From: Octopus sinensis
Lineage: Eukaryota
Direction of reading: 5' to 3'
NCBI RefSeq assembly: GCF_006345805.1
Contig: NW_021823814.1
Coordinates: forward strand, 1 to 21,222
DNA length: 21,222 nucleotides
Under the pieces are notes generated by a model. That model was not told the DNA's origin, did not search any database, and worked only from the letters and a program-made list of their open reading frames with translations. The translations under genes and the position numbers were made by a program. The first letter of the stretch is position 1; every line of letters begins with the position of its first letter. Shown piece after piece: positions 8,610-10,821 of the stretch.

Positions 8610-10821
8610 TTATTCTTCATATACGTTTATTGTTTGGATAATTTTATCTAATATGGTTATTGTTAACCTAAGATTCGTATTTATTGTAGACAATAACTTA
8701 GGCATGCCAGACGTCACCAGTATCAAAATAATCTTTGTGAATGTTGAAAAGTCGAATTCACTTTGATTTAATATATTTTTGCAAACAAAGAAAAAATATA
8801 TGATTAGAAACAATTTTACAATGGATTTACCAATCTCGTTTCTCAATGGAAAATTATGGTTAACAATTGTCTTGAACAACTTGGCGTTTATGAATTCTTC
8901 CCCATATTTTGACTGAACTAAATTTGGACGAAGAATTTTGGTGAGCTTTATGGCTTCGAGTAGAATAAAGTCATACCGTTTCTGAATAGCTTTTATAATT
9001 TCAATACCATAGAGAAGAAACATGGAAACAAACCATATATCACCAACAGTATCAGGCTTAGCAAGTACTGCAATAGCTGAAGAAAATATATACGTGCAGA
9101 GGATTTCAAAACTTGTAAGAAATATAAAGATTAAATAAATTCCCCATATTATAAAACATAGAAACGATATGAATGTTAAAATGAAAGCAATAATCTTGAA
9201 AATATAGTTAGGATTCAAATACAGGGGTTAAATATAAACTCTGAAATAACTTAATGGTAAAGTTAAAATCAGATAAACAATTGGGATTCCATAATAAACG
9301 AGGCACAGAAATAATTCGCAGACAGAAAATACAGCAAATAAAATTGTAATGGAAACAAAGAGCCAAAGCGTAAGGAATCGCCAGAAAATATTTCTCCTGT
9401 AGTAATATAACCAAATTTTCTTTATACGATTAATCCAAGTATAAATTATTAAATACCAGAAATTTGGGTTTAAAGCAGTAGAAATATTAGCTTTCATTAT
9501 TGCATAGAGTAGATCATAATCCTGTAGTGTAGAAACATTTAAACTGCCATACTTCTGTAATAATCTCTTATTTTGAATGAGAAACGTGAAAGTGGATCTT
9601 TGATGTAATGTATTATAAGCGACAGTCTCACTTGTTCGACTGGGAAGAACAAAGAGAATAAAGCTGAAAAATATGTAGACCGTGAACCACAAAAACGGAC
9701 CCCCCATGAAGCCATCTGTATTGTCATAACTTTCAGTTATTCCTAATATTAGGGCGCGATAGCCCAATGGTATACCATCTTGGTAAAGAATTTCTACTGT
9801 TTCATATAAAAATAAGTAATGCATCAAAAGATCCAGAAAGATTACTGAAAGAGAAAATAGAATACAAAGGAATCTTCTCAGCCTCGAGGCTAAGAGAGTG
9901 GAATGGTGAAAGCAAAACAACCAAGACAGAAAATGAGAGAATGTGTAAATATTATGTTTTCCATTGATCCACTCGGATTCGTGTGGCAATGTGCTTTTAA
10001 TTGTAAATATGAATTCATCATGAGCAAACAGTGGCAGATTGAGTTGACGGGAATGTGAAGGTACTTTCGCTTTTGATACGAAACTAATGAGTAATGGTAA
10101 TATAGCCCACAAAACAGCTCCGAAAGTATTTGCATAATTGTAAAATATAGAATTCTCAATGATTTTTCCTGAACAAATGGATTTGGTGTGATAAACATGA
10201 CTTTCATTTTTATAGAGTTTACAGCAATAGTTCTCGATTTATACCAATTCGTTTGTGAGCTTCAAATGTGCCAGGGCTGTTCTTCTTTATGTCTTGAGAC
10301 AAATTTATATAAAAACATATGAATCCAGATTCTGCCATTTGCAATTTGTCCATAAATGTGATTCTTTTCAATGCCTCGAATATCAAATATATTAAATCGT
10401 GTCTCTGAATATTTTGTTTTCCACAAGTGATATTGATATCAATCCTTTGTTTAGCAACGTAGACGTCTAACATTTTAAAAGAATTCATTGAAAAATCATA
10501 GGAGAAAGTTCTATATAGAGTTAAAGCACCTGATTTATCTGGAATCCACGTAAAATGTCTCGCATTCGCAAAATAATCCAAAGGTACAGGATTAAGAAGT
10601 TCATCAAGTGTCTTGTTTGATAAATGGACTTCAAAATTGAAAACCTCTTTTTCTAATTTTACTAAACGAGATAAAATCTCACCGATATTGGGAGGGATTT
10701 TAACTTCACAATCATTGCCGAGTTCCTTCGCATCGATGTTTAGTGATGTCAGTGTGATAATAAGAATGATTGAAAGAATAAGAGAACTGGTTGCTGTTGT
10801 TGTCGTCTGCATGGCAGCCAT
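8610..10821 (-). pseudogene. Single-coding-exon gene for a ~736-codon signal-peptide + multi-pass membrane protein of unassigned family, with one frameshift (~10239) and one in-frame stop (9230-9228)
   Basis: ORF 10821-10219 joins the frame of ORF 10112-9228 by removing one A (…HKRIGI|IENYCCKLYKNESHVYHTKSICSGKIIENSIFYNYANTFGAVLWAILPLL…). That frame is open from 10238. ORFs 10112-9228 and 9218-8610 are in the same frame, separated only by TAA (…VYI*PLYLNPNY…). The protein has an N-terminal hydrophobic signal, a Cys- and sequon-containing ectodomain, and about 9-10 hydrophobic segments. Confidence 0.8.

What the first reader, a model, noticed from the sequence alone, without database searches (positions are those of the whole stretch)
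8610..10821. Hidden ~736-codon orphan receptor/channel-like membrane protein gene split across three track ORFs
Removing one A at ~10239 and reading through one TAA (9230-9228) gives a single intronless CDS. It has a signal peptide (…TLTSLNIDA|KE), a ~200-aa ectodomain with several Cys (including a CC pair) and N-glycosylation sequons (NKT, NIT, NLS, NES), and about 9-10 predicted TM segments. Distinctive motifs include GIPLGYRALILG…GGP, LNPNFW, ELFLCLVYYGIP, LFKTIVNHNFPLRNEI and TSGMPKLL. A splice acceptor 10 nt before the ATG and an AATAAA after the stop support a real transcription unit. I recall similar uncharacterised proteins in molluscs and cnidarians but cannot name a domain or function. 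An AT-rich, single-exon, multi-pass gene of this kind is a candidate for an expanded, undescribed sensory or immune receptor/channel family. That function is inference.
Basis: partly seen in the sequence, partly recalled or inferred. Interest (0 to 1): 0.72.

Follow-up and report, generated by a model that had tools for sequence, protein, structure and literature searches.

The report
Broken copy of octopus membrane-protein gene
The three reading frames are one gene, but it is a recently broken extra copy of an octopus gene family for large membrane proteins, found across molluscs, brachiopods and annelids, whose function nobody has tested.

Summary
Minus strand 10821..8610 is one colinear, single-exon gene of about 740 codons, broken twice. 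The frameshift is not an extra A. It is an 11-nt deletion (junction in AGAA, 10234-10231) relative to three paralogues. The TAA at 9230-9228 is TAC in the closest paralogue.

The window is the whole unplaced contig VCDQ01000260.1 of the Octopus sinensis assembly GCA_006345805.1. Intact paralogues of 731-747 aa, all in a single exon where DNA was fetched, are already annotated as "uncharacterized protein" in O. sinensis, O. bimaculoides and Argonauta. The closest is LOC118765918 (83% aa, 90% nt).

The copy is a mosaic, which indicates gene conversion. Apart from the two lesions it is no more decayed than intact paralogues, so it is a young pseudogene or null allele. Assembly error is less likely.

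The wider family has 132 clusters at 50% identity and includes bivalves, abalone, Lingula and Owenia. No Pfam domain was found. A confident AlphaFold model (pLDDT 84.6, pTM 0.82) has no neighbour in the PDB. The UniRef label "STRA6" on two members failed every test run here.

Any receptor, channel or transporter function is inference only.

The parts
8512..11133 (-). Duplicated unit shared with the paralogue LOC118765918 (L001). It holds about 312 nt of upstream (intronic) sequence, the whole CDS exon and about 98 nt of 3' flank.
   Evidence: blastn gives 90.4% identity over 2688 columns. Sliding identity collapses to 35-50% above 11133 and to about 33-52% below 8512.
10832..10860 (-). Pyrimidine-rich tract ending in TTACAG (AG at 10833-10832), 10 nt before the ATG. 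Likely the 3' splice acceptor of an upstream intron.
   Evidence: TTACAG|ATAAC[CG]AAAT-ATG is invariant in the window and L001-L004, although the sequence further upstream is diverged. Use as a splice site is inferred; no RNA data were available.
10219..10821 (-). Piece 1: ATG to the premature stop (200 codons). It encodes the signal-peptide-like helix (residues 9-26) and most of the ectodomain. The last few codons (RELLL*) are out of the ancestral frame.
   Evidence: This ORF is the only gene called on the contig in the public collection.
10231..10234 (-). Junction of an 11-nt deletion (AGAA microhomology). This is the frameshifting lesion.
   Evidence: DNA alignment with three O. sinensis paralogues. 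It is the only indel in the whole CDS relative to L001. Restoring 11 nt gives 2223 nt, the same as L001 and L002.
9231..10234 (-). Piece 2, in the second frame: the CC pair and last ectodomain Cys, TM1-TM5, and the conserved motifs GIPLGY...GGP, NPNFW and CELFLCLVYYGIP (conserved Glu502 at 9317-9315).
9228..9230 (-). In-frame TAA nonsense codon at restored residue 531.
   Evidence: TAC in L001 and TTC in L002 and L003. Homologues have Y, F or L here. It is one of only three differences from L001 (9318, 9228, 9194) between 9369 and 9194.
8610..9227 (-). Piece 3, in the same frame as piece 2: the C-terminal transmembrane helices, the motifs LFKTIVNHNFPLR and SGMPKLL, and the natural stop TAA at 8612-8610.

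Best explanation
The locus is a young, non-processed (DNA-duplicated) pseudogene or null allele. It lies on an unplaced 21-kb contig of the Octopus sinensis assembly. Its parent family has compact genes whose whole coding sequence sits in one exon.

Family members encode proteins of about 740 aa (750-870 aa outside cephalopods) with four parts:
- an N-terminal signal-peptide-like helix;
- an alpha/beta ectodomain of about 190 aa, held by six conserved cysteines and carrying two conserved N-glycosylation sequons;
- about ten membrane helices, with a near-invariant buried Glu (E502), conserved Arg (R313, R316, R465) and conserved Pro and GGP turns;
- a short C-terminal tail.

In this copy an 11-nt deletion shifts the frame after residue 195, with a stop after codon 200. 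A TAC-to-TAA change sits further on at codon 531. At most a truncated ectodomain fragment could be made, not the membrane protein.

The copy has exchanged sequence with its paralogue LOC118765918 by gene conversion, which gives a mosaic of about 99-100% and about 80% identical blocks. Apart from the two lesions it is as well preserved as intact paralogues, so the inactivation is recent.

Shown: the gene structure, the two lesions, the homology, the mosaicism and the family's breadth.

Inferred: that the lesions are biological rather than assembly errors, and that the intact family members are glycoproteins of the cell surface or secretory pathway whose outward-facing domain binds a ligand and whose helix bundle acts as a receptor or transporter. 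No experiment or characterised homologue supports any specific activity.
For: - Three pieces colinear with 11 homologues (E = 0 for nine of them).
- 11-nt deletion against three paralogues; TAC/TTC to TAA.
- Only one indel in 2.2 kb of CDS, and no single-base indels in about 940 nt that are 99-100% identical to other O. sinensis sequence. The neighbouring 757-codon LINE ORF is intact. The contig consensus is therefore clean, and an 11-nt loss is not a typical long-read error.
- The window is contig VCDQ01000260.1.
- Intact single-exon paralogues lie on chromosome CM016859.1 at 205.04, 205.34, 208.59 and 208.61 Mb.
- Conserved intron acceptor upstream of the ATG.
- Mosaic identity: 4 substitutions in 543 nt against 8.4% overall, P about 5e-16.
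- Private changes at sites otherwise invariant in octopods: 8 in the window, against 2-9 in the six nearest intact paralogues (all eight intact Octopus full-length proteins: 4-29).
- Family breadth and absence of known domains.
- Confident model with no PDB neighbour.
Against: - The sequence is an unplaced contig of a long-read assembly, and read support for the two lesions could not be checked.
- The mosaic pattern could in principle come from a consensus built from reads of several paralogues.
- There is no excess of nonsynonymous change on the window lineage (23 syn/55 nonsyn against 13/39 for the intact paralogue, not significant). Sequence evolution alone therefore does not prove loss of constraint.
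- No expression data are available for this copy or for the family.
Confidence: 0.7

Rival explanations
1. The gene is intact and functional in the animal. The 11-nt deletion and the TAA are errors of the assembly: an unpolished or chimeric consensus on a small unplaced contig.
For: - The contig is unplaced and only 21 kb long.
- The gene is otherwise as well conserved as its intact paralogues, and its lineage N/S ratio is like theirs.
- The mosaic of blocks near-identical to L001 could arise from mixed reads.
Against: - Relative to L001 there is exactly one indel in the CDS and none in about 940 nt of 99-100% identical sequence, so small-indel noise is absent.
- The adjacent 2.3-kb LINE ORF is uninterrupted.
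- An 11-nt loss at a 4-nt microhomology, together with a clean transversion, is more typical of real mutations than of long-read consensus errors.
Confidence: 0.2
2. The truncated first ORF (200 codons: signal peptide plus most of the ectodomain) is itself the product. It would be a secreted, ectodomain-only derivative acting as a soluble decoy or ligand-binding protein.
For: - The 5' flank, the splice acceptor and the first 230 nt of CDS are 99-100% identical to the intact paralogue, so its upstream signals may be preserved.
- The premature stop lies in the last (only coding) exon, so classical exon-junction-dependent decay of the mRNA would not be triggered (inference from general knowledge).
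- The ORF is called as a gene in the public collection.
Against: - The fragment ends before the conserved CC pair and Cys216, leaving three of the six conserved cysteines (C38, C133, C169) without their likely partners. Misfolding is therefore likely.
- No other family member with this architecture is evident.
- No expression evidence is available.
Confidence: 0.06
3. The family is a lophotrochozoan form of STRA6, the membrane receptor for retinol-binding protein, as the UniRef names of two O. bimaculoides members state. It would take up retinol.
For: UniRef names P0005 and P0006 'Receptor for retinol uptake STRA6'. Both families are multi-pass proteins of about 700 aa with an outward-facing N-terminus and some very long helices (general knowledge of PDB 5SY1).
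Against: - No match to Pfam PF14752 in any of the 30 scanned family members or the restored window protein, even at permissive E-value cut-offs (up to 10, up to 1). Genuine STRA6 scores 2e-261.
- Family profiles find no STRA6 chain in the PDB sequences.
- hhalign of the 103-sequence profile against human STRA6 and against a 20-sequence STRA6 profile gives probability 0.2%.
- Foldseek of the confident model lists no STRA6 structure among the 50 best of 68 matches at E <= 10.
- Annelids are reported to lack STRA6 and its ligands RBP4 and TTR (PMC5821490).
Confidence: 0.03
4. The copy is a processed pseudogene: a retrocopy of a spliced mRNA, which would explain the absence of introns.
For: The CDS has no introns, and an active-looking LINE reverse transcriptase lies 0.7 kb downstream.
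Against: - All functional paralogues checked also have a single-exon CDS.
- Homology to the paralogue extends 312 nt upstream of the ATG, through a conserved splice acceptor. Intronic sequence was therefore copied, which a retrocopy would lack.
- No poly(A) tract follows the 3' end of the homology block. What follows is an (ATC/ATG)n microsatellite that is also present, in a different form, after L001.
Confidence: 0.02

Closest known systems
Octopus sinensis LOC118765918 (P0001, XP-type RefSeq 'uncharacterized protein') and its octopod paralogues (LOC115211026, LOC115232508, LOC115209402; O. bimaculoides LOC106875165, LOC106877664/6; Argonauta hians)
   Same: Full-length colinear homology (52-84% aa). 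Same single-exon CDS, same upstream acceptor, same cysteine pattern and same motifs. The CDS length is identical (2223 nt) once the 11 nt are restored.
   Different: The window copy carries a frameshifting deletion and a nonsense codon. It is orthologue-like to no annotated protein along its whole length (mosaic). It sits on an unplaced contig.
Spiralian 'uncharacterized proteins' of 750-870 aa: Mytilus spp., Ostrea edulis, Mercenaria mercenaria, Potamilus streckersoni, Haliotis asinina, Lingula anatina LOC112042193, Owenia fusiformis
   Same: Profile E-values of about 1e-15 to 1e-34 over nearly the full length. Shared conserved residues: C38, C133, C169, C199-C200, R313, R316, GGP373-375, P393, FW454-455, R465, E502, P513, P589 and P707.
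   Different: Only about 20% identical. They are longer, with extra loops. None has a function or a Pfam domain either.
STRA6 / RBP_receptor (Pfam PF14752; PDB 5SY1)
   Same: It is a multi-pass membrane protein of similar size, and an automatic UniRef name links two family members to it.
   Different: No similarity was detectable at sequence, profile or fold level. STRA6 has only a short N-terminal extracellular segment and a long calmodulin-binding C-terminus (general knowledge). This family has a 190-aa Cys-rich ectodomain and a tail of about 20 aa.
Lineage-expanded receptor gene families with clustered, gene-converting paralogues and frequent pseudogenes (for example animal chemoreceptor families)
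   Same: Genomic behaviour only. There are several paralogues on the distal 4 Mb of one chromosome, a near-identical inverted pair (dS 0.037), truncated copies, mosaic gene conversion and moderately high dN/dS of 0.37-0.47.
   Different: No sequence or fold relation to any known receptor, channel or transporter class. Expression sites and ligands are unknown.

Membership tests
Octopod/spiralian ~10-TM 'LOC118765918-like' family (uncharacterised, no Pfam model) | Colinear full-length homology to family members | tested here: met
   11 homologues span all three pieces; the family profile finds 132 clusters; tblastn places residues 28-199 and 199-740 of P0001 on 10740-10225 and 10238-8613.
Octopod/spiralian ~10-TM 'LOC118765918-like' family (uncharacterised, no Pfam model) | Conserved ectodomain cysteines (C38, C133, C169, C199, C200, C216) and conserved motifs (GxPxGF...GGP, NPxFW, CxxExxLCxxYYGxP, HxPxR) | tested here: met
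   All are present in the restored window protein.
Octopod/spiralian ~10-TM 'LOC118765918-like' family (uncharacterised, no Pfam model) | Whole CDS in one exon, preceded by a conserved splice acceptor | tested here: met
   Uninterrupted ORFs in L001-L004 and L006. Acceptor invariant. Actual splicing was not tested.
Octopod/spiralian ~10-TM 'LOC118765918-like' family (uncharacterised, no Pfam model) | Open reading frame intact (functional member) | tested here: not met
   11-nt deletion and TAA.
Non-processed (duplicated) pseudogene | Disabling lesions relative to intact paralogues, with flanking non-coding homology retained | tested here: met
   Whether the lesions are real in the animal could not be tested without reads.
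Processed pseudogene (retrocopy) | Lacks intronic and promoter sequence of the parent, has a 3' poly(A) and target-site duplications | tested here: not met
   Homology runs 312 nt upstream through the conserved acceptor, and there is no poly(A) at the 3' boundary.
STRA6 / RBP_receptor (PF14752) | Match to the Pfam RBP_receptor model | tested here: not met
   None in the 12 sequences of alignment A1 (the restored window protein plus 11 octopod homologues) at E <= 10, nor in 20 further relatives at E <= 1. The positive control, human STRA6, scores E = 2e-261.
STRA6 / RBP_receptor (PF14752) | Profile-profile or fold similarity to STRA6 | tested here: not met
   hhalign probability 0.2%. No PDB sequence hit. 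Foldseek against the PDB: best E = 1.0, TM <= 0.12, and no STRA6 entry listed. Caveat: the STRA6 profile was built from mammals only.
STRA6 / RBP_receptor (PF14752) | Binds holo-RBP4 and calmodulin, and transports retinol | not testable with these tools
   Biochemical property. A paper reports that RBP4, TTR and STRA6 are absent from an annelid (PMC5821490).
Known channel, transporter or GPCR folds in the PDB | Structural neighbour with a significant Foldseek score | tested here: not met
   0 matches at E <= 0.001 for a model with pLDDT 84.6 and pTM 0.82. Nothing in BFVD either. No AlphaFold DB library was available, and Foldseek is weaker on all-helical membrane bundles.

The most novel reading that the evidence does not exclude
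The family to which this broken copy belongs would be a spiralian-wide class of multi-pass surface glycoproteins with a fold not yet seen in any solved structure. So far it has been seen in molluscs, a brachiopod and an annelid. It is multi-copy, and its coding sequence was a single exon in the five loci fetched. Such a family would be an unrecognised type of ligand-binding receptor, transporter or channel. The octopus expansion, with its gene conversion and pseudogene turnover, would reflect diversification of ligand specificity.
Probability: 0.3. Interest if true: 0.65.

Novelty: new member of a known kind. Interest (0 to 1): 0.33.

Why it matters
For this locus, very little. It is one more decayed paralogue on an unplaced contig, and it should be annotated as a pseudogene rather than as a 200-aa protein.

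For the family, more:
- It is large and ancient (at least molluscs, brachiopods and annelids), with compact genes for proteins of 740-870 aa and about ten membrane helices.
- It has no Pfam model, no literature and no structural neighbour. Its only functional label in the databases (STRA6) appears to be wrong.
- Correcting that label would stop false inferences about retinoid uptake in lophotrochozoans.
- The intact paralogues are tractable single-exon targets for expression, localisation and cryo-EM.

Tried and rejected
1. Synteny with LOC118765918. A 99.3% match of window 5994-6394 to the first 401 nt of L001 first suggested that the window abuts that locus. It lies inside a LINE reverse-transcriptase ORF, so it is a repeat and not evidence of adjacency.
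2. STRA6 membership was rejected.
3. The restored protein found nothing in Pfam or in PDB sequences.
4. The first AlphaFold run, on 12 octopod sequences, was unusable (pLDDT 44.7). Only the 103-sequence alignment gave a confident model.
5. Foldseek against BFVD found nothing.
6. The third word-indexed homologue search, with the deep alignment, returned only octopods again. The one gain was two further O. vulgaris fragments.
7. The test for relaxed selection on the window lineage was not significant. Region-wise dN/dS of about 1 in the 3' part against L001 is confounded by gene conversion and was not used.
8. AATAAA as evidence of a transcription unit: not conserved in paralogues, and expected often in 68% A+T DNA.
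9. Literature searches by gene and protein accessions and by topic found nothing on the family.
10. Rfam and tRNA scans of the window were empty.
11. A look-up of the O. vulgaris proteins P0003 and P0340 for genomic context failed because they are not on record.
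Full report
**1. What is in the sequence**

On the minus strand, an ATG at 10821 opens a 200-codon ORF that ends at 10219. A second frame is open from about 10236 to a TAA at 9230-9228. The same frame continues to a TAA at 8612-8610. 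The description is therefore accurate.

**2. It is one gene, and homologues prove it**

The restored protein finds 19 proteins, all from octopods: Octopus sinensis, O. vulgaris, O. bimaculoides and Argonauta hians. The full-length ones are 731-747 aa, with E = 0 and up to 82-83% identity by BLASTP (83-84% in the alignment). Eleven of them align colinearly across all three pieces.

**3. The lesions**

- **Frameshift.** At the frame change the homologues read RIGINRE[IL][ILV]KNYCC, and the window lacks four residues. The DNA alignment with three O. sinensis paralogues shows an 11-nt deletion in the window. Its junction falls in an AGAA that occurs on both sides of the deleted stretch in the nearest paralogue (window 10234-10231). 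With 11 nt restored the CDS is 2223 nt, exactly that of two intact paralogues. The true lesion is this deletion, not a surplus A.
- **Nonsense codon.** The TAA at 9230-9228 is TAC in the closest paralogue and TTC in two others.
- **Nothing else.** Relative to the closest paralogue there is no other indel in the whole CDS.

**4. Where the window comes from**

The 200-aa ORF is on record on exactly one contig, VCDQ01000260.1 of assembly GCA_006345805.1 (O. sinensis). That contig is 21,222 nt long and has the same coordinates as the window. The window is therefore this entire unplaced contig.

Four of the O. sinensis paralogues were located on chromosome CM016859.1, at 205.04, 205.34, 208.59 and 208.61 Mb. 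Each has an uninterrupted single-exon CDS. One search lists three further O. sinensis family proteins whose longest contig has the length of that chromosome.

An early idea that the window abuts the 205.04-Mb locus was wrong. The 99.3% match lies inside a LINE reverse-transcriptase ORF.

**5. Gene structure**

The sequence TTACAG|ATAAC[CG]AAAT-ATG is invariant in the window and in four paralogous loci, although the sequence further upstream is diverged. It implies an upstream non-coding exon, with the whole CDS in the last exon.

Homology to the nearest paralogue runs from 312 nt upstream of the ATG to about 98 nt past the stop (window 11133-8512) and then collapses. Intronic sequence was therefore copied. 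The duplicate is DNA-based and not a retrocopy. The AATAAA motifs after the stop are not conserved.

**6. Mosaicism and age**

Identity to LOC118765918 is 99-100% from 11133 to 10591: 4 substitutions in 543 nt against 8.4% overall, P about 5e-16. It then alternates between blocks of about 78-87% and 96-99%. No annotated family protein is orthologue-like along the whole length. The simplest reading is gene conversion among paralogues.

- Family dN/dS is 0.37-0.47. Window against L001 gives 0.60.
- A lineage-assignment test shows no significant excess of nonsynonymous change on the window branch: 23 syn/55 nonsyn against 13/39.
- The window has 8 private changes at sites otherwise invariant in octopods. 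The six nearest intact paralogues have 2-9.

The inactivation is therefore recent, or the lesions are not real.

**7. Real lesions or assembly error?**

The reads could not be inspected, so the evidence is indirect. About 940 nt of the window that are 99-100% identical to other O. sinensis sequence contain no small indels. The 757-codon LINE ORF next door is intact. The CDS has exactly one indel. The consensus is therefore clean, and an 11-nt loss at a microhomology plus a clean C-to-A change look like mutations.

I put about 0.7 on pseudogene or null allele and about 0.2 on artefact. From memory, this assembly was built from PacBio long reads with Hi-C. I could not verify that in the library.

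**8. The family**

A profile of the octopod proteins, scored against 1.84 billion representatives, finds 132 clusters at E <= 0.001, of which 113 are at E <= 1e-10. Most are 750-870 aa and are matched over nearly their full length.

Named members are all 'uncharacterized' or 'hypothetical'. They come from:
- bivalves: Mytilus spp., Ostrea edulis, Mercenaria, Potamilus;
- the abalone Haliotis asinina;
- the brachiopod Lingula anatina;
- the annelid Owenia fusiformis.

No cnidarian appeared in the sample. Many members are complete ORFs on 2-4-kb contigs, and one checked locus (L006) is a single 748-codon ORF. This suggests that the single-exon CDS is widespread in the family.

None of the 30 members scanned has a Pfam domain.

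Residues conserved in at least 90% of the 103 aligned sequences are C38, W92, S114, L118, C133, C169, C199, C200, P242, R313, R316, G373-G374-P375, P393, F454-W455, R465, E502, P513, P589, Y604, Y616, P658 and P707. The most conserved stretch is the GIPLGY...GGP segment between TM2 and TM3.

**9. Structure**

- With only the octopod sequences, AlphaFold gave pLDDT 44.7.
- With the 103-sequence alignment it gave pLDDT 84.6 and pTM 0.82. The model has an N-terminal helix (9-26), an alpha/beta domain (about 35-222), a disordered loop (255-281) and a helical membrane domain. The membrane domain includes two very long helices (539-587 and 589-630) and a short beta hairpin (635-645).
- Hydropathy gives the N-terminal segment plus about 8-10 membrane segments.
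- Foldseek finds nothing significant in the PDB (best E = 1.0, TM-scores <= 0.12) or in BFVD.
- No AlphaFold DB library was available, and Foldseek is less sensitive for helical bundles. 'New fold' therefore remains provisional.

**10. The STRA6 label**

UniRef calls two O. bimaculoides members 'Receptor for retinol uptake STRA6'. I wrote human STRA6 from memory and verified it: PF14752 matches at E = 2e-261 over the full model.

- No family member matches PF14752.
- Family profiles find no STRA6 chain in the PDB sequences.
- hhalign of the family profile against STRA6, and against a 20-sequence STRA6 alignment, gives probability 0.2%.
- Foldseek lists no STRA6 structure.
- A study of Platynereis reports that annelids lack STRA6, RBP4 and TTR (PMC5821490).

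The label is not supported.

**11. How it most likely works**

For intact members, all of the following is inferred. The N-terminal helix acts as a signal peptide. The alpha/beta domain faces outward and is stabilised by three disulfides, with N-glycans at the conserved NLS and NES sequons. After TM1 the chain enters a Lys/Arg-rich cytoplasmic loop that ends in the conserved SRLRR before TM2, which is consistent with the positive-inside rule. The buried, near-invariant Glu502 and Arg465 and the Pro/Gly kinks suggest a helix bundle that binds or moves a polar ligand or ion, or that couples ectodomain binding to a conformational change. No catalytic-looking His/Asp/Ser set is conserved. I cannot choose between receptor, transporter and channel.

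For the window copy, translation would stop after codon 200. Because the stop is in the last exon, the mRNA might escape exon-junction-dependent decay. The fragment lacks three of the six conserved cysteines, however, and is probably non-functional.

**12. Verdict**

The locus itself is an ordinary young pseudogene of an already annotated, though uncharacterised, family. The family is the more interesting object.

Noticed in passing
window 5627-7900 (-): An intact 757-codon ORF with a reverse-transcriptase domain (PF00078, E = 5e-28) and a weak, sub-threshold zf-RVT match lies 0.7 kb downstream of the gene. It is a LINE-type retrotransposon. A copy 99.3% identical over 401 nt lies 9.6 kb upstream of LOC118765918 (L001 1-401), so the element family looks recently active in O. 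sinensis.
   Followed up: partly
window 270-990, 12500-14300, 18370-19160; also 4890-5420 and 7700-8540: There are very long microsatellite-like tracts. (CATA/TATG-type)n produces the 'MYVC/HTYI' pseudo-ORFs, and (ATT/ATC/ATG)n tracts directly flank the gene's 3' end. Together they make up a large share of the contig and probably explain why it is unplaced.
   Followed up: no
window 16756-17169 (+): This 137-aa ORF has no Pfam match. Its sequence (…LKLYSLQRRRERY…) resembles, from memory, the C-terminal tail of another non-LTR retrotransposon ORF2. That resemblance was not tested.
   Followed up: no
L001 ~9760-9785 versus window 11056: The intact paralogue has a 25-nt tandem duplication (AATAGAACATCTCCTGCAACCGTTG) in the otherwise 99-100% identical upstream region. 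It is the only difference of note in that block.
   Followed up: no
L003 and L004 (O. sinensis CM016859.1, 208.59 and 208.61 Mb): Two family genes lie about 18 kb apart on opposite strands (tail to tail) and are nearly identical (dN 0.027, dS 0.037). One (P0010) is annotated at only 602 aa. This points to a very recent inverted duplication or conversion, possibly with another truncated member.
   Followed up: partly
P0019 (O. vulgaris, 1010 aa), P0016 (O. sinensis, 841 aa): These annotated proteins match only about 36-38% of the family protein. P0019 also carries gelsolin-type Pfam domains. Both are probably gene-model fusions with family fragments.
   Followed up: no
UniRef entries A0A0L8GRC4_OCTBM (P0006) and the P0005 cluster: Their automatic name 'Receptor for retinol uptake STRA6' is not supported by any test run here and looks like an annotation error that could propagate.
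   Followed up: yes
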